Origin: Macrostomum lignano
Taxonomy: Eukaryota
DNA: 28,620 nt
Reading direction: 5' to 3'
Assembly: GCA_002269645.1 (NCBI GenBank)
Contig: NIVC01005010.1
Location: 1-28,620 of the forward strand
Shown: in pieces, positions 1 to 28,227 of the stretch
Position numbering within the stretch: the first letter of the stretch is position 1
How the letters are laid out: every line of letters begins with the position of its first letter
Notes under the pieces: model-generated
The model's database searches: none
What the model saw: the letters and a program-made list of their open reading frames with translations, nothing else
Told to the model about the DNA's origin: nothing
Program-made: the position numbers and the translations under genes

Positions 1-9
1 TAGGGTTAG
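1..9 (+). repeat. End of an interstitial telomeric tract
   Basis: TAGGGTTAG followed by the same palindrome as in the other units. Confidence 0.85.
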
Positions 10-13
10 AGTT

Positions 14-29
14 ACACACAGCTGCGTGT
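14..29 (-). other. 16-bp imperfect palindrome ACACACAGCTGCGTGT abutting the telomeric tract
   Basis: Also at 16903-16918, 20796-20811 and in the other short units; variant ACGCACAGCTTCGTGT in most long units. Confidence 0.8.
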
Positions 30-870
30 TGAAAGGCACCAATAATAAAATGAACTATTTAAAGCAACAGATTGCGGCAATCGATTTCTCAGTCAGCCAG
101 TATCAGTCTCAGTTCAAGTTAGCAAAATGATTGCGCAATTTAAATCAACCCATCCAATACACAAGGACCGCCCCCCCCTTCCAATACGCAGTGGCAAGTA
201 GACGTTTGAACCCCAACTTTATCTCTGACCTGTCGCAAAATAAGTACAATCTTTGCAAAAGTATGGAAATAGTTTTTGAATGCTGTATTTTAGTTATTTC
301 ATATTTAAATCAAACAACTTATATCCCGAACTCAGCGCTGCAAGCTCTTTCCAGCAATAAAAGTCTCGTCTCTCAAAGTTCAAAAATCGAGCAACAGTTA
401 GCGTTTGAAACTTTCTGATTTAAAGCATTGAAATATCGAGTGTACGTTCACTGCCTGCAGCAGAGGGAGGCTCGCAAGTTTATTCATTGAATTTAACTGT
501 CCAAAACTACACAGGGCAGCCTATTGAAAATCAGAACACAATTCGTTGCGCAATTGTCTATCTATACAATCAGCCAGTGAGCTAGGGTCCGATTGTACAC
601 ACGCAGCCACTGAGAATGCGACCATCCCCCCACTGGAGAGAAAATACACTGTAGAGATAGGGACAGTTGTGGCGCAATCACTGAAATTCATGCAAATTTT
701 CAGCTCCAAGCAGAAAGAGGGGACAATTAAGATTATCAAAGGTCAAGACGAGTTTTCTGCTTTTTTGAGGATCTTAGAAATTAAAATTTCAGAATTAAAA
801 TAGCCTATAGCCGACCTCGGATAATTTCCAATCTTCCCATATAAGTTTCAACGCTGAGTTGGCACTATTC

Positions 871-988
871 AAGGAGGAGTTGTCGAAATGACAGACACAC
901 AGACACAGACAAACAACACGTCAACTTTAGTATATATAGAAGACAAACAACACGTCAACTTTAGTATATACGAGTGGAACTCCTCCTT
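871..988. other. 11-bp inverted repeat AAGGAGGAGTT (871-881) / AACTCCTCCTT (978-988) bracketing the unit junction
   Basis: Exact reverse complements; also at 3673-3683/3752-3762 and the other junctions (10-bp core where B is type 2). Confidence 0.85.
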
Positions 989-996
989 CGGAGGAG
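971..996 (-). other. Helitron-type 3' end: hairpin CTCCTCC-GAA-GGAGGAG + TTCCA + CTCG
   Basis: Perfect 7-bp stem at 980-996, ending 9 nt before the junction; repeated at all 12 junctions (one stem mismatch in U8-U11). Confidence 0.7.
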
Positions 997-1130
997 AAAG
1001 GGGAAGAACTCCCATCACCGGAATTCTATTCCCTGAAATATCCATCAACTGAAATTCCATGTCTTTAACCCTATCTTCCAAATCGTCTCCAAATTCTTTA
1101 CAAAATCTTTCAAAGACCATAGCTCAAAGA

Positions 1131-2247
1131 CTCTTACGTCTCTCATATCTACTCTCTCCTCTCTTCGCTATTATCGTGACTCGCTTCTCTCTCCTCTCTC
1201 TCATCTCATCTCTACCCCTACTCTCTTATTTATCTCTACTCCCTTATTTATCTCTTCTCCCTCGTCTTTCGTCTGTACCCTATCCTGTCTACTCTCCTAT
1301 CTTCTATCTTATCTCTCCCCTTTTCTCTCCTCTCTCATATCTAATCTCTAATCACTTATCTATCGTCTCCGCTCTACTTTCTCTCTTCTTTTTTCTCTCT
1401 TCTCTCTGCTCTCATTTCTCGTATCTCTTATACGCTCTCACCCTCTCCTTTCTTATCTCCCATCTTTCTTCCCTCCTTTCTACTGCATCACCTGTCTCCT
1501 CTCTTCTCTTTTCTCTCCTCTCCATTCTCTCTTCTCTACTCTCATCTCCCCTCATCTCTTCTCTAATCTCTAATCTCTTCTCTCTCTTATTTTCTCACTC
1601 ATCTCTTTTCTCATTGCATCTCTCATCTCTCCTCTCTCTCTCTCCTCTCATCTGTACTATCTTTTTTATCTCTTCTCCCAGGTCTTTCAAATTTACTCTC
1701 TCCTGTCTCCTCTCTCCCCTCGTCTTTCCTCTCTCATATCTCTTCTCTACTCACTTATATATTCTCTCTCCTCTGCTCCCCTTTTACACTTTCCTATATG
1801 CTCTCACTCTCACCCTCCCCTTTCTTATCTGCTGTTTTTACACTCCTTTCTACCACCTGTCTCCTCTCGTTTCTCTCCTCTCTGCACTCTCATCTTTACC
1901 CTCTTCTTTCTCCTCACTACTTTCTTCTCTTAAATCTCTGATCTCTGATCTTTCATCTCTCTCCTCTCACCTCTCACCTCTCTCCTCTCTTTCCTCTCTT
2001 CTATTGCCTCTGTACGCTCTTGTCCCTCCTTTCTTCTCCATCCTGTCTCCTCTCTGCAATCTCATATCTCCTCTCTCATATCCTCTCCCTTCATCTCCTC
2101 TCTCCTCTTCTCTTCTCTCTCCTTCGTTCCCGCCTTACTTTCCTCTTCTCTCCCATCTGTCATGTCTAATCTCTCCACTCATTTCTACTCTGTTTTCTAT
2201 CATCTCATCTCTCTTCTCTTTTCATTCTTCTCTTTACTCTCTTCTCT
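1131..2247. repeat. Degenerate polypyrimidine (CT-rich) low-complexity tract, U1
   Basis: Mostly C/T with scattered A and rare G on the plus strand. Confidence 0.95.
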
Positions 2248-2267
2248 GACTGATTGAAGATGCCAAA

Positions 2268-2760
2268 TCCATCAAGATCCTCTCCGCGAAGCAGAAATCC
2301 TGTCCGTGCAACTGAAAACCATCGAAATCCTCTCCGTGAAACTGGACTCCTTCGAAATCCTCTCCTTGAAACTTAAATCCATCAAAATCGTCTCCATAAA
2401 ACAGAAATCAATCATAAATTATCTCCGCGAAACAGAAATCCTCTCCGTGAAGCTGAACATAATCGAAATCCTCTCCGTGAAACTGAACACCTTCGAAATC
2501 CTCTCCGTGAAACTGAACACCTTCGAAATCCTCTCCTTGAAACTTAAATCTATCAAAATCGTCTCCATAAAGCAGAAATCAATCATAAATTTAACTCCGC
2601 GAAACAGAAATCCTCTCCGTGAAGCTGAACATCATCAAAATCCTCTCCGTGAAACTGAGCACCATCGAAATCCTCTCCACGAAACAGAAATCCTCTTTGT
2701 CAAAATTAAAACATTGAAATCGTCTCCGCTAAACTGGACTCAATCAATTTTTTCCGTCAA
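2268..2760. repeat. Degenerate minisatellite; 30-bp unit GAAATCCTCTCCGTGAAACTGAACACCATC with 20-bp variant GAAATCCTCTCCRCGAAACA
   Basis: Read directly. Present immediately left of the TTAGGG tract in every complete unit (about 4605, 7707, 10824, 14221, 16663, 19201, 20606, 21836, 23071, 24295, 26292). Confidence 0.9.
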
Positions 2761-2786
2761 ACAACTCAACTCTCCGGATTCATTGG

Positions 2787-2808
2787 TTAGGGTTAGGGTT
2801 AGGGTTAG
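2787..2808 (+). repeat. Interstitial (TTAGGG)3 TTAG
   Basis: Read directly. Confidence 0.95.
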
Positions 2809-3904
2809 AACTACGCACAGCTTCGTGTTAAAAGGCACTGATAAACTATTGAACTAATTGAATCAATTCATTGCGCAACCGATTTCACAGTCAGTCAGTA
2901 TCAGTCTCAGTTAAAGTTAACAAAAACATTGCGCAATCTAAATCAACCCTCCAATACAAAGCAACTGACCCCCTTCCTATACACAGCGCCAGTTGGAAGT
3001 CGAAACCCCCAACTTTATCTCTCACCTCTCGCCAAAATGAGTACAATCTTTGCAGAAAGTTTAAAGTATGGAAATAGTTTTTGCAATGCAGAGCTTTTAG
3101 TTTTCATATTTGAAGCAAACAATTTATATCCCTGAAATCAGCTTTGCAAGTTCTTTCCAGCAATATAAATTTTTTCTCTCAAAGTTAAAAACTCGAGCAA
3201 CAGTTTGCGTTTGAAACTTTCTGATTTAAAGCATTGAAATATCGATTGTACGTTCACTGCCTGCTAAAGAGGCCCGCAAGTTTATGCATTGAATTTCAAC
3301 GTTCAACAAAATCACAGGGCTGCCTATTGAAAATTAGAACACAAATCTTTGCGCAATTGTCTATACAGTCAGCCAGTGAGCCAGGGTCCGATTGTACACA
3401 GGCAGCCATTTAGAACGCCCCATCCCCCCACTGGAGAGAAAATACACTGCAGAGATAGGGAAAAGTTGTGGCGCAATCACTTGAAATTCATGCAAATTTT
3501 CAGCTCCAAGCAGAAAGAGGGGACAATTAAGATTATCAAAGGTCAAGACCGCCGTTTTCTGCTTTTTTGAGGATTTTAGAAATTAAAATTTCAGAATTAA
3601 AATAGCCTATAGCCGACCTCGGATAATTTCCAATCTTCCCATATAAGTTTCAACGCTGAGTTGCCACTATTCAAGGAGGAGTTGTCGAAATGACAGACAG
3701 ACACACAGACAGACAGACAAACAACGCGTCAACTTTAGTATATACGAGTGGAACTCCTCCTTCGGAGGAGAAAGGGGAAGAACTCCCATCACCGGAATTC
3801 TATTCCCTGAAATATCCATCAACTGAAATTCCATGTCTTTAACCCTATCTTCCAAATCGTCTCCAAATTCTTTACAAAATCTTTCAAAGACCATAGCTCA
3901 AAGA

Positions 3905-4582
3905 CTCTCAAGTCTCTCATATCTCCTCTCTCCTCTCTCTCATCTCATCTCTACCCCTGCTCCCTTATTTATCTCTTCTCCCTCGTCTTTCGTCTGTACC
4001 TTCTCCTGTCTTCTGTCTCCTCTCTTCACTCTTATCTCTCCCTCTTCTCTCCTCTCTCATATGTCATCTCTACTCACTTATCTATCGTCTCTCTTAACCC
4101 TCTCTCTCTCTTCTCTTTTCTCTTCTCTCTGCTCTCATTTCTCATATTTCATATACGCTCTGACACTACTTTCTTGTCTCCCATCTTTCTTCCTCCTTTT
4201 CACTATCCCCTGTCTCTTCTCTTCTCTCTTTTCTATTCTCTCCATTCTCTCTTTTCTCTTTCCTTGCTCCTTTCATCTCTCTCCTCTCTCCTCTCTCTCC
4301 TCTCATCTTTACTACCTTATTTATATCTTCTCCTAGTCTTTCGTCTGTACTCTCTCCTGTCTCCTCTCTCCCCTGCTCTCTCATCCCTCATCTCCTCATC
4401 TCACTCTTTCTTTCTCCTCTACTCTCCCCTCTCTTATATTGCCTCTGTACGCTCTTATCCCTCATCTATTCTCTCTCCTATCATCTCCAATCTGTCATGT
4501 CTAATCTCTCCACTCAATTATACTCTGTTTTCTATCATCTCTTCTCTCTTCTCTTTTCAGTCTTCTCTTTACTCTCTTCTCT
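3905..4582. repeat. CT-rich tract, U2
   Basis: As in U1. Confidence 0.95.
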
Positions 4583-4604
4583 GACTGATTGAAGATGCCA
4601 AATC

Positions 4605-4950
4605 CATCAAGATCCTCTCCGCGAAGCAAAAATCCTGTCTGTGCAACTAAAAACCATCGAAATCCTCTCAGTGAAACTGGACTCCTTCGAAATCCTCTCC
4701 TTGAAACTTAAATCCATCAAAATTGTTTCCATAAAACAGAAATCAATCATAAATTATCTCCGCGAAACAGAAAGCCTCTCCGTGAAGCTGAACATGATCG
4801 AAATCCTCTCCGTGAAACTGAACACCATGGAAATCCTTTCGTGAAACTGAACATCATCGAAATCCTCTCCACGAAACAGAAATCTTCTCCGTCAGAATTT
4901 AAACATTGAAATCGTCTCCGTTAAACTTGACTTAATCGAATTTTTTCCGT
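4605..4950. repeat. Same minisatellite, U2 copy
   Basis: Repeated GAAATCCTCTCCGTGAAAC core. Confidence 0.85.
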
Positions 4951-4975
4951 CAAACAACTTAACTCGCCAGATTCA

Positions 4976-5009
4976 TTAGGGTTAGGGTTAGGGTTAGGGT
5001 TAGGGTTAG
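4976..5009 (+). repeat. Interstitial (TTAGGG)5 TTAG
   Basis: Read directly. Confidence 0.95.
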
Positions 5010-6426
5010 AACTACGCACAGCTTCGTGTTAAAAGGCACAGATAAAAATATTGAACTAATTGAATCAATTCATTGCGCAACCGATTTCACAGTCAGTATC
5101 AGTCTCAGTTAAATTTAACCAAAAGATTGCGCAATTTAAATCAACCCTCCAGTACACAGAGACCGACCCCTTTTCAATACGCTGTGGCAGTTAGAAATTG
5201 AACCCCATCTGTTGGGGGCATTGAACCAAAAAATGAGTACAATCTTTGCAGAAAGCTAAAAGTATGGAAATAGTTTTTTTGATGCTGCTCTTTTAGTCTT
5301 TATATTGAAAGCTAACAATTTATATCCTCGAACTCAGCGTTGCAAGATCTTTTCAGCAGTATAAGTCTCTTCTCTTAAAGTTTAGAACTCGAAGAGCAGT
5401 TAGCGTTTGAAAGTTTCCGTTTTAAAGCATTAAAATATCGAGTGTACGTTCACTGCCTGCCAAAGAGGCTCGCAAGTTGATTCATTCACTACACAGGCCG
5501 GCTATTACACAGGGCAGCGTATTGAAAGGCACAGATAATAAAACAAATTGATGGTGCAACCGATTTCACAGTCAGTCAGTATCAGTCTCAGTTAAAGTTA
5601 ACAAAAACATTGCGCAATCTAAATCAACCCTCCAATACACAGCAGCAGTGAGAAGTTGAACCCTCCCCCAACTTTATCTATTACGTCTCGCAAAACTGAG
5701 CACAATTTTTGCAGAAAGTTAAAAGCATGGAAATAGTTTTTTCAATGCTGTGCTTTTTCTTTTTATATTTAAAGCAAACAACTTATATCCCGAACTCAGC
5801 GTTGCAAGATCTTTCCAGCAATATAAGTTTCTCCTCTGAAAGTTTAAAACTCGAGGAACAGTTAGCGTTTGAATTTACCAATTTCCCGACTACTTGCTAG
5901 AGAAGCTCGCAAGTTTATTCATTGAATTTCACTGCCAAACTAATACACAGGGCCGATAATAAAAAATGAACCAATTGAATCAATTGATTGTGCAATATAT
6001 TTCTGTGTTAGTCAGTATCAGTCTCAGTTAAAGTTAACAAACAGATTGCGCAATCTAAATCAACCCTCAAATACACACCGACCGACCTCCTAACTGTTGG
6101 GGGTCGGTCGAACGCCATTGAAATCCTAAAATGAGTACAATCTTTGCAGAAAGTTTAAAGTATGGAAATAGTTTTTGCAATGCAGAGCTTTTAGTTTTCA
6201 TATTTAAAGCAAACAATTTATATCCCTGAAATCAGCTTTGCAAGTTCTTTCCAGCAATATAAATTTTTTCTCTCAAAGTTAAAAACTCGAGCAACAGTTT
6301 GCGTTTGAAACTTTCTGATTTAAAGCATTGAAATATCGATTGTACGTTCACTGCCTGCTAAAGAGGCCCGCAAGTTTATGCATTGAATTTCAAGGTTCAA
6401 CAAAATCACAGGGCTGCCTATTGAAA
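5010..6426. repeat. Nested tandem repeat: three diverged A modules (about 5010-5527, 5528-5954, 5955-6426)
   Basis: Each contains CAGTATCAGTCTCAGTTAAA, ATTGCGCAAT..AAATCAACCCTC, AAAGTATGGAAATAG (one with C for T) and ends ACACAGGGC. Confidence 0.9.
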
Positions 6427-7004
6427 ATTAGAACACAAATCTTTGCGCAATTGTCTATACAGTCAGCCAGTGAGCCAGGGTCCGATTGTACACATGCAGC
6501 CATTTAGAACGCCCCATCCCCCACTGGAGAGAAAATACACTGCAGAGATAGGGAAAAGTTGTGGCGCAATCACTTGAAATTCATGCAAATTTTCAGCTCC
6601 AAGCAGAAAGAGGGGACAATTAAGATTATCAAAGGTCAAGACCGCCGTTTTCTGCTTTTTTGAGGATCTTAGAAATTAAAATTTCAGAATTAAAATAGCC
6701 TATAGCCGACCTCGGATAATTTCCAATCTTCCCATATAAGTTTCAACGCTGAGTTGGCACTATTCAAGGAGGAGTTGTCGAAATGACAGACAGACGTACA
6801 GACAGACATACAGACAGACAAACAACGCGTCAACTTTAGTATATAGAGTGGAACTCCTCCTTCGGAGGAGAAAGGGGAAGAACTCCCATCACCGGAATTC
6901 TATTCCCTGAAATATCCATCAACTGAAATTCCATGTCTTTAACCCTATCTTCCAAATCGTCTCCAAATTCTTTACAAAATCTTTCAAAGACCATAGCTCA
7001 AAGA

Positions 7005-7684
7005 CTCTCAAGTCTCTCATATCTCCTCTCTCCTCTCTCTCATCTCATCTCTACCCCTGCTCCCTTATTTATCTCTTCTCCCTCGTCTTTCGTCTGTACC
7101 TTCTCCTGTCTTCTGTCTCCTCTCTTCACTCTTATCTCTCCCTCTTCTCTCCTCTCTCATATGTCATCTCTACTCACTTATCTATCGTCTCTCTTAACCC
7201 TCTCTCTCTCTTCTCTTTTCTCTTCTCTCTGCTCTCATTTCTCATATTTCATATACGCTCTGACACTACTTTCTTGTCTCCCATCTTTCTTCCTCCTTTT
7301 CACTATCCCCTGTCTCTTCTCTTCTCTCTTTTCTATTCTCTCCATTCTCTCTTTTCTCATTTCCTTGCTCCTTTCATCTCTCTCCTCTCTCCTCACTCTC
7401 CTCTCATCTTTACTACCTTATTTATATCTTCTCCTTAGTCTTTCGTCTGTACTCTCTCCTGTCTCCTCTCTCCCCTGCTCTCTCATCCCTCATCTCCTCA
7501 TCTCACTCTTTCTTTCTCCTCTACTCTCCCCTCTCTTATATTGCCTCTGTACGCTCTTATCCCTCATCTATTCTCTCTCCTATCATCTCCAATCTGTCAT
7601 GTCTAATCTCTCCACTCAATTATACTCTGTTTTCTATCATCTCTTCTCTCTTCTCTTTTCAGTCTTCTCTTTACTCTCTTCTCT
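7005..7684. repeat. CT-rich tract, U3
   Basis: As in U1. Confidence 0.95.
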
Positions 7685-8077
7685 GACTGATTGAAGATGC
7701 CAAATCCATCAAGATCCTCTCCGCGAAGCAAAAATCCTGTCTGTGCAACTAAAAACCATCGAAATCCTCTCAGTGAAACTGGACTCCTTCGAAATCCTCT
7801 CCTTGAAACTTAAATCCATCAAAATTGTTTCCATAAAACAGAAATCAATCATAAATTATCTCCGCGAAACAGAAAGCCTCTCCGTGAAGCTGAACATGAT
7901 CGAAATCCTCTCCGTGAAACTGAACACCATGGAAATCCTTTCGTGAAACTGAACATCATCGAAATCCTCTCCACGAAACAGAAATCTTCTCCGTCAGAAT
8001 TTAAACATTGAAATCGTCTCCGTTAAACTTGACTTAATCGAATTTTTTCCGTCAAACAACTTAACTCGCCAGATTCA

Positions 8078-8111
8078 TTAGGGTTAGGGTTAGGGTTAGG
8101 GTTAGGGTTAG
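8078..8111 (+). repeat. Interstitial (TTAGGG)5 TTAG
   Basis: Read directly. Confidence 0.95.
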
Positions 8112-9531
8112 AACTACGCACAGCTTCGTGTTAAAAGGCACAGATAAAAATATTGAACTAATTGAATCAATTCATTGCGCAACCGATTTCACAGTCAGTA
8201 TCAGTCTCAGTTAAATTTAACCAAAAGATTGCGCAATTTAAATCAACCCTCCAGTACACAGAGACCGACCCCTTTTCAATACGCTGTGGCAGTTAGAAAT
8301 TGAACCCCCATCTGTTGGGGGCATTGAACCAAAAAATGAGTACAATCTTTGCAGAAAGCTAAAAGTATGGAAATAGTTTTTTTGATGCTGCTCTTTTAGT
8401 CTTTATATTGAAAGCTAACAATTTATATCCTCGAACTCAGCGTTGCAAGATCTTTTCAGCAGTATAAGTCTCTTCTCTTAAAGTTTAGAACTCGAAGAGC
8501 AGTTAGCGTTTGAAAGTTTCCGTTTTAAAGCATTAAAATATCGAGTGTACGTTCACTGCCTGCCAAAGAGGCTCGCAAGTTGATTCATTCACTACACAGG
8601 CCGGCTATTACACAGGGCAGCGTATTGAAAGGCACAGATAATAAAACAAATTGATGGTGCAACCGATTTCACAGTCAGTCAGTATCAGTCTCAGTTAAAG
8701 TTAACAAAAACATTGCGCAATCTAAATCAACCCTCCAATACACAGCAGCAGTGAGAAGTTGAACCCTCCCCCAACTTTATCTATTACGTCTCGCAAAACT
8801 GAGCACAATTTTTGCAGAAAGTTAAAAGCATGGAAATAGTTTTTTCAATGCTGTGCTTTTTCTTTTTATATTTAAAGCAAACAACTTATATCCCCGAACT
8901 CAGCGTTGCAAGATCTTTCCAGCAATATAAGTTTCTCCTCTGAAAGTTTAAAACTCGAGGAACAGTTAGCGTTTGAATTTACCAATTTCCCGACTACTTG
9001 CTAGAGAAGCTCGCAAGTTTATTCATTGAATTTCACTGCCAAACTAATACACAGGGCCGATAATAAAAAATGAACCAATTGAATCAATTGATTGTGCAAT
9101 ATAATTCTGTGTTAGTCAGTATCAGTCTCAGTTAAAGTTAACAAACAGATTGCGCAATCTAAATCAACCCTCAAATACACACCGACCGACCTCCTAACTG
9201 TTGGGGGGTCGGTCGAACGCCATTGAAATCCTAAAATGAGTACAATCTTTGCAGAAAGTTTAAAGTATGGAAATAGTTTTTGCAATGCAGAGCTTTTAGT
9301 TTTCATATTTAAAGCAAACAATTTATATCCCTGAAATCAGCTTTGCAAGTTCTTTCCAGCAATATAAATTTTTTCTCTCAAAGTTAAAAACTCGAGCAAC
9401 AGTTTGCGTTTGAAACTTTCTGATTTAAAGCATTGAAATATCGATTGTACGTTCACTGCCTGCTAAAGAGGCCCGCAAGTTTATGCATTGAATTTCAAGG
9501 TTCAACAAAATCACAGGGCTGCCTATTGAAA
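8112..9531. repeat. Three A modules, U3
   Basis: As in U2. Confidence 0.9.
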
Positions 9532-19573: not shown

Positions 19574-19601
19574 TTAGGGTTAGGGTTAGGGTTAGGGTTA
19601 G
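19574..19601 (+). repeat. Interstitial (TTAGGG)4 TTAG
   Basis: Read directly. Confidence 0.95.
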
Positions 19602-20605
19602 AACTACGCACAGCTTCGTGTTAAAAGGCACAGATAAAAATATTGAACTAATTGAATCAATTCATTGCGCAACCGATTTCACAGTCAGTCAGTATCAGCC
19701 TCAGGTAAAGTTAACAAAAGATTGCGCAATCTAAATCAACCCTCCAATCCACAGCTGTAGTGAGAAGTTGAACCCTCCCCCCAACTTTATCTATTACGTC
19801 TTGCAAAACTGAGTACAATATTTGCAAAAAGTTAAAAGTATGGAAATAGTTTTCCAAATGCTGTGCTTTTTCTTTTCATAGTTAAAGCAAACAACTTATA
19901 TCCCCGAACTCAGCGTTGCAAGATCTTGCCAGCAATATAAGTTTCTCCTCTCAAAGTTTAAAACTCGAGGAACAGTTAGCGTTTGAAACTGTCTGATTTA
20001 TAGCATTGAAGTATCGAGTGTACGTTCACTGCCTGCTTGCAAGTTGATGCATTGAATTTCAATGTCCAACAAATACACAGGACTGCCCATTGATAGGCAG
20101 GAAAACTTATCAGTAGCCATATCATTGCGCAATTATCTATAAAGTCAGCCAGTGAGCCAGGGTCCAATTGTACACACGCCGCCAATGAGAACGCGCCCAT
20201 TCCCCCACAGGAGAGAAAATGCACTGGCGACATAGGAAAAAGTTGTGGCGTAATCACTCAAAATTTATGCCAATTTTCAGCTCCGAGCAGAAAGAGGGGA
20301 CAATTAAGATTATCAAAGGTCAAGACCGCCGTTTTCTGCTTTTTTAGGGATCTTAAAAATTGAAAATGAAAGATTAAAATAGCCTAAAGCCATCCTCGGA
20401 AAATTTGCAGTTTTCCCATATAAGTTTCAACGCTGAGTTGCAAGTATTCTAGGAGGAGTTATCGAACTGACATACAGACAGACAAACAACGCGTCAACTT
20501 TAGTATATACGAGGCCAACTCCTCCTTCGGAGAAGAAAGGGGAAGAACTCCAATCAGCGGAATTCCATTCCCTGAACTCCATCAGCGGAATCCCATTTTC
20601 AACAC

Positions 20606-20745
20606 CTCTCCGCGCAACAGAAATCGTCTCCGTGAAACTGAACACATCGAAATCCTCTCCGTGAAACTGAACACCATCGAAATATTCTACGCGAAATAGA
20701 AATCCTCTCCGTGAAACTGGACTAAATCGAAATTTCTACGTCAAA
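20606..20745. repeat. Same minisatellite, reduced copy in short unit U8
   Basis: Repeated GAAATCCTCTCCGTGAAAC core. Confidence 0.8.
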
Positions 20746-20769
20746 CAGCCCAGCTCTAGAATTCATTGG

Positions 20770-20791
20770 TTAAGGTTAGGGTTAGGGTTAG
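20770..20791 (+). repeat. Interstitial TTAAGG (TTAGGG)2 TTAG
   Basis: Read directly. Confidence 0.9.
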
Positions 20792-21739
20792 AGCTACACA
20801 CAGCTGCGTGTTGAAAGACGCCGTAAAAACATTGAACCAATTAAATTGCGCAACTTATTTCTCAGGCAGTCAGTATCAGCCTCAGTTAAAGTTAACAAAA
20901 AGATTGCGCAATCTAAATCAACCCTCAAATACACAGCAACCGACCCCCTTCCAATACGCAGTGCAGCTAGAAATTGAACCCCCCCCACCAACTATTGGGG
21001 GGTCGGTCGAACCCCCATTGAACTCCAAAATGAGAACAATCTTTGCAGAAAGCTAAAAGTATGAAAATCTTTTCTTGAATGCTGTGAATTTAATTTTCAT
21101 ATTTAAAGCAAAAAACTTATATCCCCGAACTCATCGCAGCAAGATCTTTCCAGCAATATAAGTTCTCCTCTCTAAGTTCAAAACTCGAGCAACAGTTAGT
21201 GTTTGAAACTTTCTGATTTTAAGCATTGAAATATCGAGTGTACGTTCACTGCCTGCTAAAGATGCTCGCAAGTTTATGCATTTAAATGCACTGAATTTCA
21301 CTGTGCAAAAAATACACAGGGCTTCCTGTTAAAAAACAGAACACAAATATTTGCGCAATTGTCTATAAAGTCAGCCAGTGAGCCAGGGTCCAATTGTACA
21401 CACGCCGCCAATAAGAACGCGCCCATTCCCCACAGGAGAGAAAATGCACTGGCGACATAGGAAAAAGTTGTGGCGTAATCACTCAAAATTTATGCCAATT
21501 TTCAGCTCCGAGCAGAAAGAGGGGACAATTAAGATTATCAAAGGTCAAGACCGCCGTTTTCTGCTTTTTTAGGGATCTTAAAAATTGAAAATGAAAGATT
21601 AAAATAGCCTAAAGCCATCCTCGGAAAATTTGCAGTTTTCCATATAAGTTTCAACGCTGAGTTGCAAGTATTCTAGGAGGAGTTATCGAACTGACATACA
21701 TACAGACAAACAACGCACCACTTTAGTATTAACGATAGA

Positions 21740-22974
21740 CGAGGCCAACTCCTCCTTCGGAGAAGAAAGGGGAAGAACTCCAATCAGCGGAATTCCATTC
21801 CCTGAACTCCATCAGCGGAATCCCATTTTCAACACCTCTCCGCGCAACAGAAATCGTCTCCGTGAAACTGAACACAATCGAAATCCTCTCCGTGAAACTG
21901 AACACCATCGAAATATTCTCGCGAAATAGAAATCCTCTCCGTGAAACTGGACTAAATCGAAATTTCTACGTCAAACAGCCCAGCTCTCAGAAATCATTGG
22001 TTAGGGTTAGGGTTAGGGTTAGAGCTACACACAGCTGCGTGTTGAAAGACGCCGTAAAAACATTGAACCAATTAAATTGCGCAACTTATTTCTCAGGCAG
22101 TCAGTATCAGCCTCAGTTAAAGTTAACAAAAAGATTGCGCAATCTAAATCAACCCTCAAATACACAGCAACCGACCCCCTTCCAATACGCAGTGCAGCTA
22201 GAAATTGAACCCCCCCCTCACCAACTATTGGGGGGTCGGTCGAACCCCCATTGAACTCCAAAATGAGAACAATCTTTGCAGAAAGCTAAAAGTATGAAAA
22301 TCTTTTCTTGAATGCTGTGAATTTAATTTTCATATTTAAAGCAAAAAACTTATATCCCCGAACTTATCGCAGCAAGATCTTTCCAGCAATATAAGTTCTC
22401 CTCTCTAAGTTCAAAACTCGAGCAACAGTTAGTGTTTGAAACTTTCTGATTTTAAGCATTGAAATATCGAGTGTACGTTCACTGCCTGCTAAAGATGCTC
22501 GCAAGTTTATGCATTAAATGCACTGAATTTCACTGTGCAAAAAATACACAGGGCTTCCTGTTAAAAAACAGAACACAAATATTTGCGCAATTGTCTATAA
22601 AGTCAGCCAGTGAGCCAGGGTCCAATTGTACACACGCCGCCAATAAGAACGCGCCCATTCCCCCACAGGAGAGAAAATGCACTGGCGACATAGGAAAAAG
22701 TTGTGGCGTAATCACTCAAAATTTATGCCAATTTTCAGCTCCGAGCAGAAAGAGGGGACAATTAAGATTATCAAAGGTCAAGACCGCCGTTTTCTGCTTT
22801 TTTAGGGATCTTAAAAATTGAAAATGAAAGATTAAAATAGCCTAAAGCCATCCTCGGAAAATTTGCAGTTTTCCAATATAAGTTTCAACGCTGAGTTGCA
22901 AGTATTCTAGGAGGAGTTATCGAACTGACATACATACAGACAAACAACGCACCACTTTTAGTATTAACGATAGA
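21740..22974 (-). mobile_element. Unit U9, short subfamily, 1235 bp
   Basis: Near-identical to U8 and U10; clean CTCG|TC junctions on both sides. Confidence 0.7.
22001..22022 (+). repeat. Interstitial (TTAGGG)3 TTAG
   Basis: Read directly. Confidence 0.9.
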
Positions 22975-24198
22975 CGAGGCCAACTCCTCCTTCGGAGAAG
23001 AAAGGGGAAGAACTCCAATCAGCGGAATTCCATTCCCTGAACTCCATCAGCGGAATCCCATTTTCAACACCTCTCCGCGCAACAGAAATCGTCTCCGTGA
23101 AACTGAACACATCGAAATCCTCTCCGTGAAACTGAACACCATCGAAATATTCTACGCGAAATAGAAATCCTCTCCGTGAAACTGGACTAAATCGAAATTT
23201 CTACGTCAAACAGCCCAGCTCTCAGAATTCATTGGTTAAGGTTAGGGTTAGGGTTAGAGCTACACACAGCTGCGTGTTGAAAGACGCCGTAAAAACATTG
23301 AACCAATTAAATTGCGCAACTTATTTCTCAGGCAGTCAGTATCAGCCTCAGTTAAAGTTAACAAAAAGATTGCGCAATCTAAATCAACCCTCAAATACAC
23401 AGCAACCGACCCCCTTCCAATACGCAGTGCAGCTAGAAATTGAACCCCCCCCACCAACTATTGGGGGTCGGTCGAACCCCCATTGAACTCCAAAATGAGA
23501 ACAATCTTTGCAGAAAGCTAAAAGTATGAAAATCTTTTCTTGAATGCTGTGAATTTAATTTTCATATTTAAAGCAAAAAACTTATATCCCCGAACTTATC
23601 GCAGCAAGATCTTTCCAGCAATATAAGTTCTCCTCTCTAAGTTCAAAACTCGAGCAACAGTTAGTGTTTGAAACTTTCTGATTTTAAGCATTGAAATATC
23701 GAGTGTACGTTCACTGCCTGCTAAAGATGCTCGCAAGTTTATGCATTAAATGCACTGAATTTCACTGTGCAAAAAATACACAGGGCTTCCTGTTAAAAAA
23801 CAGAACACAAATATTGCGCAATTGTCTATAAAGTCAGCCAGTGAGCCAGGGTCCAATTGTACACACGCCGCCAATGAGAACGCGCCCATTCCCCCACAGG
23901 AGAGAAAATGCACTGGCGACATAGGAAAAAGTTGTGGCGTAATCACTCAAAATTTATGCCAATTTTCAGCTCCGAGCAGAAAGAGGGGACAATTAAGATT
24001 ATCAAAGGTCAAGACCGCCGTTTTCTGCTTTTTTAGGGATCTTAAAAATTGAAAATGAAAGATTAAAATAGCCTAAAGCCATCCTCGGAAAATTTGCAGT
24101 TTTCCAATATAAGTTTCAACGCTGAGTTGCAAGTATTCTAGGAGGAGTTATCGAACTGACATACATACAGACAAACAACGCACCACTTTTAGTATTAA
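22975..24198 (-). mobile_element. Unit U10, short subfamily, 1224 bp
   Basis: Near-identical to U8 and U9. Confidence 0.7.
23236..23257 (+). repeat. Interstitial TTAAGG (TTAGGG)2 TTAG
   Basis: Read directly. Confidence 0.9.
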
Positions 24199-25399
24199 CG
24201 AGGCCAACTCCTCCTTCGGAGAAGAAAGGGGAAGAACTCCAATCAGCGGAATTCCATTCCCTGAACTCCATCAGCGGAATCCCATTTTCCAACACCTCTC
24301 CGCGCAACAGAAATCGTCTCCGTGAAACTGAACACCATCGAAATATTCTCCGCGAAATAGAAATCCTCTCCGTGAAACTGGACTAAATCGAAATTTCTAC
24401 GTCAAACAGCCCAGCTCTCAGAATTCATTGGTTAAGGTTAGGGTTAGGGTTAGAGCTACACACAGCTGCGTGTTGAAAGACGCCGTAAAAACATTGAACC
24501 AATTAAATTGCGCAACTTATTTCTCAGGCAGTCAGTATCAGCCTCAGTTAAAGTTAACAAAAAGATTGCGCAATCTAAATCAACCCTCAAATACACAGCA
24601 ACCGACCCCCTTCCAATACGCAGTGCAGCTAGAAATTGAACCCCCCCCACCAACTATTGGGGGGTCGGTCGAACCCCCATTGAACTCCAAAATGAGCACA
24701 ATCTTTGCAGAAAGCTAAAAGTATGAAAATCTTTTCTTGAATGCTGTGAATTTAATTTTCATATTTAAAGCAAAAAACTTATATCCCCGAACTCATTGCA
24801 GCAAGATCTTTCCAGCAATATAAGTCTCTCCTCTCTAAGTTCAAAACTCGAGCAACAGTTAGTGTTTGAAACTTTCTGATTTTAAGCATTGAAATATCGA
24901 GTGTACGTTCACTGCCTGCTAAAGATGCTCGCAAGTTTATGCATTAAAATGCACTGAATTTCACTGTGCAAAAAATACACAGGGCTTCCTGTTAAAAAAC
25001 AGAACACAAATAGTTGCGCAATTGTCTATAAAGTCAGTCAGTGAGCCAGGGTTCAAGTGTACACACGCAGCCACTGAGAACGCGACCATCCCCCACTTGA
25101 GAGAAAATACACTGCCAAGATAGAAAAATTTTATGGCGCAATCACTAAAATTTATGCAAATTTTCAGCTCCAAGCAGAAAGAGGGACAATTAAGATTATC
25201 AAAGGTCAAGACCGCCATTTTCTGCTTTTTTAGGGATCTTAAAAATTGAAAATGAAAGATTAAAATAGCCTAAAGCCATCCTCGGAAAATTTGCAGTTTT
25301 CCCATATAAGTTTCAACGCTGACTTGCAAGTATTCTAGGAGGAGTTATCCAACAAACACACACACACACAGACAAACAACGCACCAACTTTAGTATTAA
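24199..25399 (-). mobile_element. Unit U11, short subfamily, 1201 bp (mosaic B module, AC microsatellite)
   Basis: Left part matches U8-U10; part of B matches U0. Confidence 0.7.
24432..24453 (+). repeat. Interstitial TTAAGG (TTAGGG)2 TTAG
   Basis: Read directly. Confidence 0.9.
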
Positions 25400-25559
25400 C
25401 GAGTGGAACTCCTCCTTCGGAGGAGAAAGGGGAAGAACTCCCATCACCGGAATTCTATTCCCTGAAATATCCATCAACTGAAATTCCATGTCTTTAACCC
25501 TATCTTCCAAATCGTCTCCAAATTCTTTACAAAATCTTTCAAAGACCATAGCTCAAAGA

Positions 25560-26271
25560 CTCTCAAGTCTCTCATATCTCCTCTCTCCTCTCTCTCATCT
25601 CATCTCTACCCCTGCTCCCTTATTTATCTCTTCTCCCTCGTCTTTCGTCTGTACCTTCTCCTGTCTTCTGTCTCCTCTCTTCACTCTTATCTCTCCCTCT
25701 TCTCTCCTCTCTCATATGTCATCTCTACTCACTTATCTATCGTCTCTCTTAACCCTCTCTCTCTCTCTTCTCTTTTCTCTTCTCTCTGCTCTCATTTCTC
25801 ATATTTCATATACGCTCTGACACTACTTTCTTGTCTCCCATCTTTCTTCCTCCTTTTCACTATCCCCTGTCTCTTCTCTTCTCTCTTTTCTATTCTCTCC
25901 ATTCTCTCTTTTCTCCTTTCCTTGCTCCTTTCATCTCTCTCCTCTCTCCTCACTCTCTTCTCCTTTCGCTTCTCTCTCCTCTCTCTCCTCTCATCTTTAC
26001 TACCTTATTTATATCTTCTCCCTAGTCTTTCGTCTGTACTCTCTCCTGTCTCCTCTCTCCCCTGCTCTCTCATCCCTCATCTCCTCATCTCACTCTTTCT
26101 TTCTCCTCTACTCTCCCCTCTCTTCTATTGCCTCTGTACGCTCTTATCCCTCATCTATTCTCTCTCCTATCATCTCCAATCTGTCATGTCTAATCTCTCC
26201 ACTCAATTATACTCTGTTTTCTATCATCTCTTCTCTCTTCTCTTTTCAGTCTTCTCTTTACTCTCTTCTCT
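25560..26271. repeat. CT-rich tract, U12
   Basis: As in U1. Confidence 0.95.
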
Positions 26272-26663
26272 GACTGATTGAAGATGCCAAATCCATCAAG
26301 ATCCTCTCCGCGAAGCAAAAATCCTGTCTGTGCAACTAAAAACCATCGAAATCCTCTCAGTGAAACTGGACTCCTTCGAAATCCTCTCCTTGAAACTTAA
26401 ATCCATCAAAATTGTTTCCATAAAACAGAAATCAATCATAAATTATCTCCGCGAAACAGAAAGCCTCTCCGTGAAGCTGAACATGATCGAAATCCTCTCC
26501 GTGAAACTGAACACCATGGAAATCCTTTCGTGAAACTGAACATCATCGAAATCCTCTCCACGAAACAGAAATCTTCTCCGTCAGAATTTAAACATTGAAA
26601 TCGTCTCCGCTAAACTTGACTTAATCGATTTTTTCCGTCAAACAACTCAACTCGCCAGATTCA

Positions 26664-26691
26664 TTAGGGTTAGGGTTAGGGTTAGGGTTAG
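26664..26691 (+). repeat. Interstitial (TTAGGG)4 TTAG
   Basis: Read directly. Confidence 0.95.
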
Positions 26692-27602
26692 AACTACGCA
26701 CAGCTTCGTGTTAAAAGGCACAGATAAAAATATTGAACTAATTGAATCAATTCATTGCGCAACCGATTTCACAGTCAGTCAGTATCAGCCTCAGGTAAAG
26801 TTAACAAAAGATTGCGCAATCTAAATCAACCCTCCAATCCACAGCTGTAGTGAGAAGTTGAACCCTCCCCCAACTTTATCTATTACGTCTTGCAAAACTG
26901 AGTACAATATTTGCAAAAAGTTAAAAGTATGGAAATAGTTTTCAAATGCTGTGCTTTTTCTTTTCATAGTTAAAGCAAACAACTTATATCCCCGAACTCA
27001 GCGTTGCAAGATCTTTCCAGCAATATAAGTTTCTCCTCTCAAAGTTTAAAACTCGAGGAACAGTTAGCGTTTGAAACTGTCTGATTTATAGCATTGAAGT
27101 ATCGAGTGTACGTTCACTGCCTGCTTGCAAGTTGATGCATTGAATTTCAATGTCCAACAAATACACAGGACTGCCCATTGATAGGCAGGAAAACTTATCA
27201 GTAGCCATATCATTGCGCAATTATCTATAAAGTCAGCCAGTGAGCCAGGGTCCAATTGTACACACGCCGCCAATGAGAACGCGCCCATTCCCCCACAGGA
27301 GAGAAAATGCACTGGCGACATAGGAAAAAGTTGTGGCGTAATCACTCAAAATTTATGCCAATTTTCAGCTCCGAGCAGAAAGAGGGGACAATTAAGATTA
27401 TCAAAGGTCAAGACCGCCGTTTTCTGCTTTTTTAGGGATCTTAAAAATTGAAAATGAAAGATTAAAATAGCCTAAAGCCATCCTCGGAAAATTTGCAGTT
27501 TTCCCATATAAGTTTCAACGCTGAGTTGCAAGTATTCTAGGAGGAGTTATCGAACTGACATACAGACAGACAAACAACGCGTCAACTTTAGTATATATAG
27601 AG

Positions 27603-27603
<1 letters not shown>

Positions 27604-27631
<28 letters not shown>
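27604..27631 (+). repeat. (GATA)7 microsatellite at the array terminus
   Basis: Read directly. Confidence 0.95.
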
Positions 27632-27633
<2 letters not shown>

Positions 27634-28227
27634 AGAGGATGTACATGTAGAATTCTTGGCTTTGTTCCCCCTCCATGATTTAACACAGTCGAGTTGAGCT
27701 TCCTCCTACTTCAGGTGTCCATGCATTGAACAATCTGATTGGAGAGTTGAGCTGAGACAATAAGGCCATGGTAATCCTATAACTGAGAGAGTTTGCTGGC
27801 TCACCAAAAAGTTTCAGGAGCAGTCAGCATGGCGACAAATCTTTGCTGTCTGCAGTCCTCCTAGGCTATGCTGTGCTTGATCTGGACCAACACCTGGTGC
27901 CCAGTGTTGACTCGGCAATGGGTAAGCTGAGCTCACATCCTGATCGTGACTATTCTAAATATGTGCCAATACAGTTTTTTTTCACGGGTTTTGTTACTAC
28001 AGTCACAGGCGTCAGGCGTCGGTAAACAATAACGGTACTGCTTTCCAACTGGTGTCTTCGCTTTTAATTATACCGTGTTAATCATTCGGCCACCAACCTA
28101 ACTCTAGTAAAAATGATTTGATGACAGACCCGAAAATTTTAGAGCCTCTAGTATTTCTTTATTGAATTAAGATGTTTTTCTGCAACTCAGTTTTATTTCC
28201 GCCTTCACAGAGTGACCAAAATGTAAA

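What the first reader, a model, noticed from the sequence alone, without database searches (positions are those of the whole stretch)
1..27636. Head-to-tail array of a non-autonomous Helitron-like element that carries a telomeric seed in every copy
Seen: 12 complete units in one orientation, with no spacer and no target-site duplication between them. On the minus strand each runs TCTAT-like 5' end, TACTAAAG, (TCTG)n, internal modules, (CCCTAA)n, then hairpin and CTCG 3' end. Established: Helitrons have 5' TC and 3' hairpin+CTRR ends, make no TSD and can form head-to-tail arrays; many animal non-autonomous Helitrons start TCTATA..CTA followed by a TGTC/TTTG microsatellite. Inference: this is a rolling-circle element turned macrosatellite that disperses short telomeric tracts as cargo. 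I do not recognise this combination as a described family, but I cannot search.
Basis: partly seen in the sequence, partly recalled or inferred. Interest (0 to 1): 0.85.

Follow-up and report, generated by a model that had tools for sequence, protein, structure and literature searches.

The report
Tandem array of Helentron-like repeat units
A non-coding 1.2-3.1 kb DNA unit built like a non-autonomous rolling-circle (Helentron/HINE-type) transposon, with a short telomere-type tract inside it, is repeated head-to-tail at least 13 times; this is a transposon-derived macrosatellite, a known kind of repeat with an unusual internal module, not a new class of element.

Summary
There are 12 complete units and one unit cut by the window start, all in one orientation. 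Each carries (TTAGGG)2-5 at the same internal position, and the array stops exactly at one unit terminus (27597).

The unit is non-coding and modular: terminus, tetranucleotide (GACA/TGTC)n microsatellite, internal tandem repeats (30 bp and about 450 bp), and a 7-bp hairpin 9 nt from the other terminus.

I also found an 11-nt inverted repeat that brackets every junction asymmetrically. It is reached by 1-3 of 500 shuffles. Such asymmetric inverted repeats mark Helentron/HINE (DINE-1, pearl) elements, not canonical Helitrons, whose CTRR 3' end is absent here (CTCG).

Recent growth was by unequal crossing-over. Near-identical blocks (99.6-99.97%) have break points inside units.

The telomeric tract has conserved flanks in all unit families, which are 12-28% diverged. 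It is therefore an old internal module, not an inter-element junction.

Dispersal, an autonomous partner and the source organism could not be tested. Every external search returned nothing.

Interest is moderate. It is a new member of a known kind; the telomeric module and the inverted-repeat layout are the unusual points.

The parts
1..27597 (.). Head-to-tail array: 12 complete units plus one cut by the window start. The array may continue beyond position 1.
1..970 (.). Unit U0, truncated by the window start inside its telomeric tract. Contains a 34-bp duplication of the R terminus (909-970).
971..3744 (.). Unit U1 (2774 bp, long type, 13.8 copies of the 30-bp repeat)
3745..6845 (.). Unit U2 (3101 bp, three 450-bp sub-repeats)
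6846..9932 (.). Unit U3 (3087 bp; 99.90% identical to U2)
9933..13060 (.). Unit U4 (3128 bp; 99.97% identical to U3)
13061..15539 (.). Unit U5 (2479 bp). Begins with the variant junction filler TAGATAGATAGAAGA.
15540..18304 (.). Unit U6 (2765 bp, most divergent). Its distal internal module at about 17860-18090 is replaced by GC-rich sequence.
18305..20509 (.). Unit U7 (2205 bp; 99.6% identical to U12); used below as the reference unit
20510..21732 (.). Unit U8 (1223 bp, short type without the polypyrimidine block)
21733..22967 (.). Unit U9 (1235 bp, short type)
22968..24198 (.). Unit U10 (1231 bp, short type)
24199..25399 (.). Unit U11 (1201 bp, short type; 97.2% identical to U10)
25400..27597 (.). 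Unit U12 (2198 bp), the last unit. Its R terminus is the end of the array.
27598..27636 (+). (TAGA)n microsatellite abutting the outer R terminus. The same motif occurs as filler in four internal junction variants. It is either part of the element end or a target microsatellite.
18305..18330 (+). Reference unit U7: L terminus CGAGTGG, then the 11-nt subterminal inverted repeat AACTCCTCCTT. This is also the 5' arm of the hairpin CTCCTCC-TTC-GGAGGAG.
18305..18460 (+). U7: conserved L flank. The first approximately 100 nt score 0.83-0.97 column conservation over 12 units.
18461..19190 (+). U7: polypyrimidine (CT-rich) low-complexity block; absent from short units
19191..19573 (+). U7: tandem 30-bp repeats (consensus GAAATCCTCTCCGTGAAACTGAACACCATC), degenerating towards the telomeric tract
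19574..19600 (+). U7: telomeric tract (TTAGGG)4TTA
19601..20449 (+). U7: internal module A, made of one approximately 450-bp sub-repeat plus an approximately 400-bp conserved distal part. It has three ATTGCGCAAT-type palindromes.
20450..20460 (+). U7: second copy of the inverted repeat (TAGGAGGAGTT; AAGGAGGAGTT in U0-U6)
20468..20483 (+). U7: tetranucleotide microsatellite (GACA)n, which is (TGTC)n on the minus strand; 16-36 nt long in other units
20484..20509 (+). U7: R terminus AAACAACGCGTCAACTTTAGTATATA, with the 6-bp palindrome ACGCGT 15 nt from the end
5009..6400 (+). U2: three tandem copies of the approximately 450-bp sub-repeat (about 5009-5487, 5488-5935, 5936-6400). The same arrangement is in U3 and U4; U6 has two copies.
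1..10 (+). Telomeric tract of U0, cut by the window start (TAGGGTTAGA)
2787..2807 (+). Telomeric tract U1, (TTAGGG)3
4976..5008 (+). Telomeric tract U2, (TTAGGG)5
8078..8110 (+). Telomeric tract U3, (TTAGGG)5
11196..11228 (+). Telomeric tract U4, (TTAGGG)5
14598..14624 (+). Telomeric tract U5, (TTAGGG)4
16865..16897 (+). Telomeric tract U6, TTAGGG TTATTG (TTAGGG)3
20770..20790 (+). Telomeric tract U8, TTAAGG (TTAGGG)2
22001..22021 (+). Telomeric tract U9, (TTAGGG)3
23236..23256 (+). Telomeric tract U10, TTAAGG (TTAGGG)2
24432..24452 (+). Telomeric tract U11, TTAAGG (TTAGGG)2
26664..26690 (+). Telomeric tract U12, (TTAGGG)4
871..996 (+). Junction core U0/U1: inverted repeat, microsatellite, R terminus (duplicated), L terminus, inverted repeat/hairpin
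3673..3770 (+). Junction core U1/U2
6766..6870 (+). Junction core U2/U3 (filler GAGTGG)
9869..9958 (+). Junction core U3/U4
12989..13099 (+). Junction core U4/U5, with the (TAGA)n AGA filler also found at the outer end of the array
15468..15565 (+). Junction core U5/U6 (inverted repeat reduced to 10 nt by T>C)
18233..18330 (+). Junction core U6/U7
20450..20535 (+). Junction core U7/U8 (10-nt inverted repeat; hairpin arm mutated)
21674..21765 (+). Junction core U8/U9 (filler CGATAGACGAGGCC)
22908..23000 (+). Junction core U9/U10 (filler CGATAGACGAGGCC)
24139..24224 (+). Junction core U10/U11
25336..25425 (+). Junction core U11/U12

Best explanation
The window holds a locally amplified macrosatellite. 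Its repeat unit is one complete non-autonomous Helitron-like element, closest in architecture to the HLE2 branch (Helentron-associated HINE, DINE-1 and pearl elements).

Shown:
- Each unit runs from a conserved L end to a conserved R end. The L end is CGAGTGG, then an 11-nt subterminal inverted repeat that also forms a 7-bp hairpin. The R end is the second inverted-repeat copy, then the (GACA)n microsatellite, then 25 nt ending in TATATA.
- The interior is variable: a polypyrimidine block, 30-bp tandem repeats, (TTAGGG)2-5, and 1-3 copies of a 450-bp sub-repeat.
- The units encode nothing.
- The array ends exactly at an R end.
- The telomeric tract lies in a context conserved in all unit families.
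- The youngest copies arose by unequal crossing-over or segmental duplication, with break points inside units.

Inferred:
- The first head-to-tail copies arose when a rolling-circle transposase supplied in trans bypassed the termination signal, or when a multimeric circle was integrated.
- In that joined state the two inverted repeats can pair and present the R/L joint in a loop.
- The telomeric tract was acquired once, by capture or by slippage, before the unit families diverged. It has since been carried passively as cargo, changing length by slippage.
For: Unit ends:
- All 12 junctions have the same L/R ends.
- The array stops at the R end, and nothing related follows it except one weak 20-nt match.
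- The ends are the most conserved parts of the unit. Column conservation is 0.83-0.97 for the approximately 100 nt on the L side and 0.92-0.95 for the approximately 250 nt inside the microsatellite. The interior is length-variable.

Inverted repeat and hairpin:
- The 11-mer AAGGAGGAGTT occurs only as an inverted pair bracketing junctions: 18 exact hits against 0.10 expected.
- It is the longest inverted repeat across a junction, reached by 1-3 of 500 shuffles.
- It is the only inverted repeat of at least 9 nt between the unit ends.
- The hairpin is the only perfect hairpin with a stem of at least 7 bp per long unit.
- Local and long-range stems compete in folding.

Modular plan:
- GTCY-type microsatellites, central tandem repeats, 11-12-nt subTIRs with an adjacent complementary IR, and a terminal palindrome are the published HINE/DINE-1/pearl plan (PMC7492417 sections 7 and 9; PMC4067079; PMC3879986; HLE2 definition in PMC11417382).
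- Tandem Helitron arrays made by terminator bypass are documented (PMC4067079; PMC11934779).

Non-coding:
- No Pfam domain above threshold, no tRNA, no Rfam family.

Unequal crossing-over:
- Region 3034-7405 matches 6128-10493 at 99%, starting inside the internal module.
- U2/U3/U4 are 99.90-99.97% identical, U8/U9/U10 99.75-99.84%, and U7/U12 99.6%. Families differ from one another by 12-28%.

Telomeric tract:
- It has conserved flanks on both sides in all 12 units, and its length tracks the unit family.
Against: - No copy outside this array was found, so mobility, exact termini, target site and an autonomous RepHel partner are all unverified.
- The inverted-repeat layout matches no published layout exactly. 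The microsatellite sits between one inverted repeat and its terminus, and that inverted repeat is 57-77 nt from the end.
- The second 'palindrome' is only the 6-bp ACGCGT.
- Folding energies of the ends are not exceptional (z about -0.5 to -1.5).
- The hairpin is already broken in the short units.
- The outer flank shows neither a T|T nor an A|T joint unambiguously.
Confidence: 0.55

Rival explanations
1. It is an ordinary complex macrosatellite or subtelomeric-type tandem repeat with no rolling-circle ancestry. The microsatellite, hairpin and inverted repeat are incidental features of a unit that was duplicated by replication slippage and unequal crossing-over. The short TTAGGG tract is a degenerate interstitial telomeric sequence or a slippage-born microsatellite.
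For: - All demonstrable growth is by unequal crossing-over, with internal break points.
- Repeats are nested at several levels: 7 nt, 30 nt, 450 nt and 1.2-3.1 kb.
- No external copy was found.
- The junction variant at 13061-13080 carries the same TAGATAGAAGA as the outer flank. That would also arise if a primordial duplication had included a few bases of flank.
Against: - The array ends exactly at the conserved R end.
- The ends are more conserved than the interior.
- A statistically unusual 11-nt inverted repeat brackets every junction in the asymmetric geometry typical of HLE2 elements.
- The L + tandem repeats + tetranucleotide microsatellite + R plan equals pearl/DTC84/HINE.
Confidence: 0.22
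2. It is a canonical Helitron (HLE1) non-autonomous element. On the minus strand it would have a 5' TC(TA)TATATAC start, a 3' hairpin plus a CTRR-like end, insertion between A and T, and would form a read-through concatemer.
For: - A hairpin lies 9 nt from the minus-strand 3' end.
- TCTA/TCTTCTA precedes TATATAC at the outer end and in junction variants.
- Tandem arrays of Helitrons are known.
Against: - The 3' tetranucleotide is CTCG, not CTRR (definition).
- In 9 of 12 junctions no TC dinucleotide starts the unit, unless it is borrowed from CTCG.
- The base before TCTTCTA at the outer end is C, not A.
- The inverted repeats, GTCY microsatellite and central repeats are HLE2/HINE traits.
Confidence: 0.08
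3. The telomeric tracts are the true unit boundaries. The array was then built by successive additions at a chromosome end, or by telomere-targeted insertion. Examples are the Helitrons that insert into telomeric repeats in Paramecium and, from memory, the terminal-addition Penelope-like retroelements of rotifers or the yeast Y' arrays. The tracts would be remnants of former telomeres.
For: - One short telomeric tract per unit, all of one polarity.
- Precedent for same-polarity internal telomeric blocks made by Helitron insertion into telomeres (PMC13085455).
- Helitron-like repeats pile up in subtelomeres of cnidarians.
- The window itself starts inside a tract.
Against: - In this phase the array would end in the middle of a unit, at the R end, and not at a tract.
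- Tract length is confined to 2-5 repeats and follows unit family rather than varying freely.
- The G-rich strand runs towards the side where the array ends in non-repeat DNA, opposite to what in-situ terminal addition predicts. This is weak evidence, because only 984 bp of flank is visible.
- The palindrome next to the tract does not fold into a stable hairpin.
- There is no RT or RepHel ORF.
Confidence: 0.08
4. The array, or its copy number, is an assembly artefact caused by over-expansion of a repeat during long-read assembly.
For: Near-identical neighbours differ mostly by 1-nt indels, which is typical of long-read consensus error. The window begins inside the repeat.
Against: At least six clearly different unit families, 12-28% diverged and with different lengths and junction variants, sit in a fixed order. 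That cannot come from duplicating reads of one copy.
Confidence: 0.05

Closest known systems
Cg_HINE elements of Crassostrea gigas (non-autonomous Helentrons; PMC7492417)
   Same: - Non-coding modular plan: flank with an 11-12-nt subTIR plus a 7-12-nt complementary IR 1-12 nt away.
- GTCY-type tetranucleotide microsatellite.
- Variable spacer, central tandem repeats (sometimes two kinds in series), opposite flank with a subTIR and a palindrome.
- No TSD.
- A source of satellite-like DNA.
   Different: - Here the microsatellite lies between one inverted repeat and its terminus, at the end opposite to the subTIR/IR hairpin.
- Central repeats are 30 bp and about 450 bp rather than about 160 bp.
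- Whole elements, not only their central repeats, are arrayed.
- A telomeric tract is a fixed internal module.
- TT target and dispersal were not testable.
- No sequence comparison was possible, because the table of Cg_HINE ends was illegible in the held supplement.
DINE-1 / HINE-Mo and Helentrons (PMC4067079)
   Same: - Subterminal inverted repeats a few nt from one end and tens of nt from the other. HINE-Mo has 2-4 nt and 38-60 nt; here it is 7 nt and 57-77 nt.
- The subTIR is itself palindromic.
- A small palindrome lies 8-35 nt from the far terminus; here ACGCGT at 15 nt.
- Microsatellites and tandem repeats lie inside.
   Different: - The inverted repeat is 11 nt, at the lower limit.
- The far palindrome is only 6 bp.
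- There are no terminal T runs.
- No autonomous partner is known.
pearl / DTC84 MITE-like elements of bivalves and sea urchin (PMC3879986)
   Same: - L + core repeats + tetranucleotide microsatellite (ACGG/ACTG/ACGA type, the same strand sense as GACA here) + short R.
- 11-bp inverted motif, subterminal in L.
   Different: - In DTC84 the second inverted repeat is terminal in R; here it precedes the microsatellite.
- No AA...AA flanks are visible.
- Units are 4-10 times larger.
Tandem arrays of Helitrons (Myotis lucifugus, Bombyx mori, Arabidopsis; cited in PMC4067079 and PMC11934779) and DINE-TR1 satellite expansions (cited in PMC6581046)
   Same: Head-to-tail copies of a rolling-circle element or of its repeats, which then behave as a satellite.
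   Different: The ends here do not meet the canonical TC...CTRR rule. Amplification here is demonstrably by unequal crossing-over.
Subtelomeric Helitron-like repeats of cnidarians (HSymSHlR, NveSHlR; PMC11934779) and telomere-capping Helitrons of Paramecium (PMC13085455)
   Same: Association of Helitron-derived tandem or nested repeats with telomeric repeats. In Paramecium there are internal same-polarity telomeric blocks and many internal satellites.
   Different: In those cases the telomeric repeats flank the elements (insertion into telomeres) or merely lie nearby. Here the tract is inside the unit, with conserved flanks. The chromosomal position of this window is unknown.

Membership tests
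Canonical Helitron (HLE1) | 5' end begins with TC | tested here: inconclusive
   On the minus strand, TCTA/TCTTCTA precedes TATATAC at the outer end and in four junction variants. Nine junctions read CTCG|TATATAC.
Canonical Helitron (HLE1) | 3' hairpin followed by CTRR | tested here: not met
   The hairpin is present 9 nt from the end, but the suffix is CTCG (CCACTCG/GGCCTCG) in all units. Definition from PMC11417382.
Canonical Helitron (HLE1) | Insertion between A and T without TSD | tested here: inconclusive
   Only one outer flank is in the window. The base before TCTTCTA is C, and the joint TATATA|TAGA is ambiguous.
Canonical Helitron (HLE1) or HLE2 | Autonomous RepHel(-EN) partner sharing the terminal sequences | not testable with these tools
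   There is no ORF with a domain in the window. The source genome is unavailable. Searches with ORFs and DNA returned nothing.
HLE2 non-autonomous (Helentron-associated HINE / DINE-1-like / pearl) | Short (11-18 nt) asymmetric terminal/subterminal inverted repeats | tested here: met
   An 11-nt (10-nt in some units) inverted pair brackets all 12 junctions, 7 nt from one end and 57-77 nt from the other. It is reached by 1-3 of 500 shuffles (6 of 500 for the 10-nt case).
HLE2 non-autonomous (HINE) | subTIR accompanied by a short complementary IR (hairpin) at one end | tested here: met
   AACTCCTCCTT-C-GGAGGAG gives a 7-bp stem and 3-nt loop. It is the only such hairpin per long unit. One mismatch in U8-U11.
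HLE2 non-autonomous (HINE) | Palindrome/stem-loop in the tail beyond the other subTIR | tested here: inconclusive
   Only the 6-bp palindrome ACGCGT, 15 nt from the R terminus. No stable fold is predicted.
HLE2 non-autonomous (HINE) | GTCY-type tetranucleotide microsatellite next to a flank module, and central tandem repeats | tested here: met
   (GACA)n = (TGTC)n of 16-36 nt in every unit. 30-bp repeats at 2-14 copies and 450-bp sub-repeats at 1-3 copies. The position of the microsatellite relative to the inverted repeat differs from published layouts.
HLE2 non-autonomous (HINE) | Insertion into TT / T-rich target, terminal T runs, no TSD | tested here: inconclusive
   The visible outer joint is TATATA|TAGAGAGA, with no T run. 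The other end of the array lies outside the window.
HLE2 non-autonomous (HINE) | Many dispersed copies with the same ends; paralogous empty sites | not testable with these tools
   No eukaryotic genome collection is available. All scans were empty.
Satellite DNA / macrosatellite | Head-to-tail repetition with block-wise homogenisation by unequal exchange | tested here: met
   At least 13 units. Blocks are 99.6-99.97% identical and have break points inside units. Families are 12-28% apart.
Telomere-targeted or terminal-addition elements (Paramecium Helitrons; Athena-type retroelements) | Units bounded by telomeric tracts of variable length, oriented with respect to the chromosome end | tested here: not met
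   The array ends at the R terminus and not at a tract. Tracts are 2-5 repeats and are family-specific. The position relative to a chromosome end is unknown.

The most novel reading that the evidence does not exclude
A Helentron-type non-autonomous element family has fixed a short telomeric-repeat tract as a functional internal module. Possible roles are recruiting telomere-binding proteins or telomerase, or homing to and seeding chromosome ends. Its inverted repeats are arranged in a layout not yet described, with the microsatellite lying between an inverted repeat and the terminus. Arrays of it would then be a rolling-circle-derived source of interstitial telomeric sites and potential neo-telomere seeds in an animal genome.
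Probability: 0.1. Interest if true: 0.7.

Novelty: new member of a known kind. Interest (0 to 1): 0.4.

Why it matters
The origin of short interstitial telomeric sites in invertebrate genomes is mostly unexplained. If the element is mobile, it would be a vehicle that copies short telomeric tracts around a genome and builds kilobase-unit satellites. That would link three repeat classes: transposon, satellite and telomeric DNA. It would also add a variant terminal layout to the poorly catalogued HLE2/HINE elements. As it stands, the window documents one clear case of a whole HINE-like element turned into a macrosatellite by unequal exchange. This is expected from current models and useful mainly for repeat annotation.

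Tried and rejected
1. External copies and organism identification. All of these returned nothing:
- Exact-pattern scans of metagenome contigs (cap exhausted), viral contigs and prokaryotic genome contigs.
- Protein-level searches with the junction-spanning ORF and an internal-module ORF.
- Exact look-ups of four window ORFs.
- A full-text search for six diagnostic oligomers.
- The supplement of PMC7492417 was illegible for the end sequences. No supplement was held for PMC11934779.

2. Coding or RNA-gene explanations. There are no tRNAs and no Rfam family. No Pfam domain exceeds threshold. The long S/L-rich ORFs are by-products of the polypyrimidine block.

3. Classical HINE subTIR within a few nt of the minus-strand 5' end. 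Not found. This led to the inverted-repeat geometry described above.

4. The internal module alone as a small canonical Helitron ending in hairpin + CTAA at the telomeric tract. Rejected, because the near-palindrome CACGCAGCTGTGTG does not give a stable hairpin and is homologous to the boundaries of the 450-bp sub-repeats.

5. Decayed further units in the flank beyond the array. Only a 20-nt 90% match at 28555-28574 (E = 0.08).

6. The first self-BLAST at 97% identity missed most blocks. It was repeated with more permissive settings.

Full report
**What is in the window**

The sequence is eukaryotic non-coding DNA. GC content is about 40%. There are no tRNA genes and no Rfam family. No ORF has a Pfam domain above threshold.

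Twelve junctions of the form ...AACAACGCGTCAACTTTAGTATATA|CGAGTGGAACTCCTCCTTCGGAGGAG... lie on the + strand. They cut positions 971-27597 into 12 complete units of 1201-3128 bp. Positions 1-970 are a thirteenth unit, cut by the window start inside its telomeric tract.

All units point the same way. The last unit ends at 27597, followed by (TAGA)n to 27636 and then by unrelated sequence.

**Anatomy of a unit (+ strand)**

- L terminus CGAGTGG (CGAGGCC in the short units).
- The 11-mer AACTCCTCCTT, which with the following C-GGAGGAG forms a hairpin with a 7-bp stem and 3-nt loop.
- About 100 nt of highly conserved L flank.
- In the eight long units, a 0.65-1.3 kb polypyrimidine block.
- Two to 14 copies of a 30-bp repeat that degenerates towards the telomeric tract.
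- (TTAGGG)2-5.
- One to three copies of an approximately 450-bp sub-repeat, then an approximately 400-bp conserved part.
- The 11-mer AAGGAGGAGTT, the exact complement of the first 11-mer.
- GTCGAAAT, then a (GACA)n microsatellite of 16-36 nt.
- A 25-nt R terminus, AACAACGCGTCAACTTTAGTATATA.

The four short units (U8-U11) lack the polypyrimidine block.

**Are the proposed ends real ends?**

Three things say yes.

- The array stops exactly at the R terminus.
- The approximately 100 nt on the L side and the approximately 250 nt inside the microsatellite on the R side are the most conserved columns of the unit (0.83-0.97). The interior varies in sequence and length.
- Small junction variants all involve the same TAGA motif that abuts the outer R terminus. 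They are TAGATAGATAGAAGA at 13061, a TAGA between the duplicated R termini at 937-940, and CGATAGA at 21733 and 22968.

The exact terminal nucleotides cannot be fixed, because the window contains only one outer flank.

**Which kind of element**

Its defining 3' CTRR is not there: the suffix is CTCG in every unit (definition in PMC11417382). A 5' TC is present only in the variants.

I looked for the inverted repeats that define the other branch, HLE2 (Helitron2/Helentron and their non-autonomous HINE/DINE-1/pearl derivatives).

- The only inverted repeat of at least 9 nt between the two ends of a unit is the 11-mer pair described above.
- It occurs nowhere else in 28.6 kb: 18 exact hits against 0.10 expected.
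- It is reached by only 1-3 of 500 dinucleotide shuffles of the junction flanks.
- It is placed asymmetrically, 7 nt from the L terminus and 57-77 nt from the R terminus.

This is the geometry described for HINEs. There the subTIR lies 2-4 nt from one end and 38-60 nt from the other, the subTIR is itself palindromic or has an adjacent complementary IR, and a small palindrome lies 8-35 nt from the far end (PMC4067079; PMC7492417). Here the far palindrome is ACGCGT, 15 nt from the end.

The sequence 'L + core repeats + tetranucleotide microsatellite + R' with 11-bp inverted motifs is also the pearl/DTC84 plan (PMC3879986). GTCY microsatellites are a hallmark of these elements.

The match is not exact. 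The microsatellite lies between an inverted repeat and the terminus. The far palindrome is weak. Predicted fold energies are unremarkable. I therefore say that it is built like, and probably derives from, an HLE2-type non-autonomous element. I do not claim proven membership.

**How the array grew**

- Unit families differ by 12-28% in the internal module.
- Neighbours are nearly identical: U2/U3/U4 at 99.90-99.97%, U8/U9/U10 at 99.75-99.84%. U7 and U12, which lie 7.1 kb apart, are 99.6% identical.
- The long high-identity blocks start and stop inside units. For example, 3034-7405 matches 6128-10493 at 99%.
- The number of 450-bp sub-repeats changes by in-register recombination.

Recent expansion is thus by unequal crossing-over or segmental duplication, as in any satellite. 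Only the origin of the first head-to-tail joint is attributed to rolling-circle read-through or a multimeric circle, and that is by inference (precedent). Many 1-nt indels between near-identical copies suggest a long-read assembly with residual errors. The copy number of the youngest blocks needs read-level confirmation.

**The telomeric tract**

Both flanks of the tract are conserved in all 12 units across all families, and tract length follows family: 5,5,5 / 4,4 / 2,3,2,2. The tract was therefore present in the common ancestor of the units and is carried inside them.

The alternative is that tracts mark former chromosome ends or telomere-targeted insertions, as for Paramecium Helitrons (PMC13085455). 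That fits poorly.

- In that phase the array would end mid-unit.
- The tracts are uniformly short.
- The adjacent near-palindrome does not fold.
- The G-strand points towards the side where the array ends in non-repeat DNA.

Whether the tract does anything is unknown.

**Comparison with the literature**

The following are all described:
- HINE-borne satellites (PMC7492417).
- DINE-TR1 expansions and telomeric Helitron fragments in Drosophila (PMC6581046).
- Subtelomeric Helitron-like arrays in cnidarians (PMC11934779).
- Helitron tandem arrays.

I found no paper that describes a HINE-type element with an internal telomeric module. The library is incomplete, and Repbase/Dfam could not be queried.

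**Limits**

No eukaryotic genome collection was available. Every external search returned nothing. The organism, the dispersal of the element, its target site and its autonomous partner remain untested.

**Verdict**

The element is Helitron-like but of Helentron/HINE architecture. It is now a macrosatellite maintained by unequal exchange, and the telomeric tract is ancestral cargo. I rate it a new member of a known kind, of moderate interest.

Noticed in passing
window 130-27221, e.g. 2928-2937, 5126-5135, 19721-19730, 20124-20133: The perfect palindrome ATTGCGCAAT (from memory, the optimal C/EBP-type bZIP site) or a one-mismatch variant occurs 48 times against 0.57 expected. There are about three per internal module, at fixed positions. 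The CpG is retained in unit families 12-28% diverged.
   Followed up: partly
window 1140-2250, 3900-4590, 7000-7690, 10090-10810, 13230-14200, 15750-16650, 18461-19190, 25560-26280: Polypyrimidine (CT-rich, GC skew about -0.7) low-complexity blocks of 0.65-1.3 kb are present only in the eight long units. They create spurious S/L-rich ORFs of up to 396 aa and could form triplex DNA.
   Followed up: partly
window 909-970: A 34-bp tandem duplication of the R terminus (AGACAAACAACACGTCAACTTTAGTATATA + TAGA). It produces two consecutive R ends before one L end.
   Followed up: yes
window 17860-18090: In unit U6 the distal part of the internal module is replaced by GC-rich sequence unlike the other units. 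U6 is also the most divergent unit, at 72-82% identity.
   Followed up: no
window 28230-28400: The flank contains a tRNA-box-B-like motif (GGCTCGATTCC) in a stretch that resembles a tRNA-derived SINE. Neither ARAGORN nor Rfam reports anything.
   Followed up: partly
window 28555-28574: A 20-nt 90% match (GTGAGCCAGGGT...) to the distal internal module of the units lies at the far right edge of the window (E = 0.08). It may be chance, or the start of a diverged relative beyond the window.
   Followed up: no
window 3745-13060 and 20510-24198: Near-identical neighbouring units differ mainly by single-base indels. This suggests residual long-read consensus errors, so exact copy number and microsatellite lengths should be treated with care.
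   Followed up: partly
window 1-10: The window begins inside a telomeric tract (TAGGGTTAGA). The G-rich strand reads inward, which is the wrong polarity for a true left-end telomere. It is probably a contig break in the repeat.
   Followed up: no
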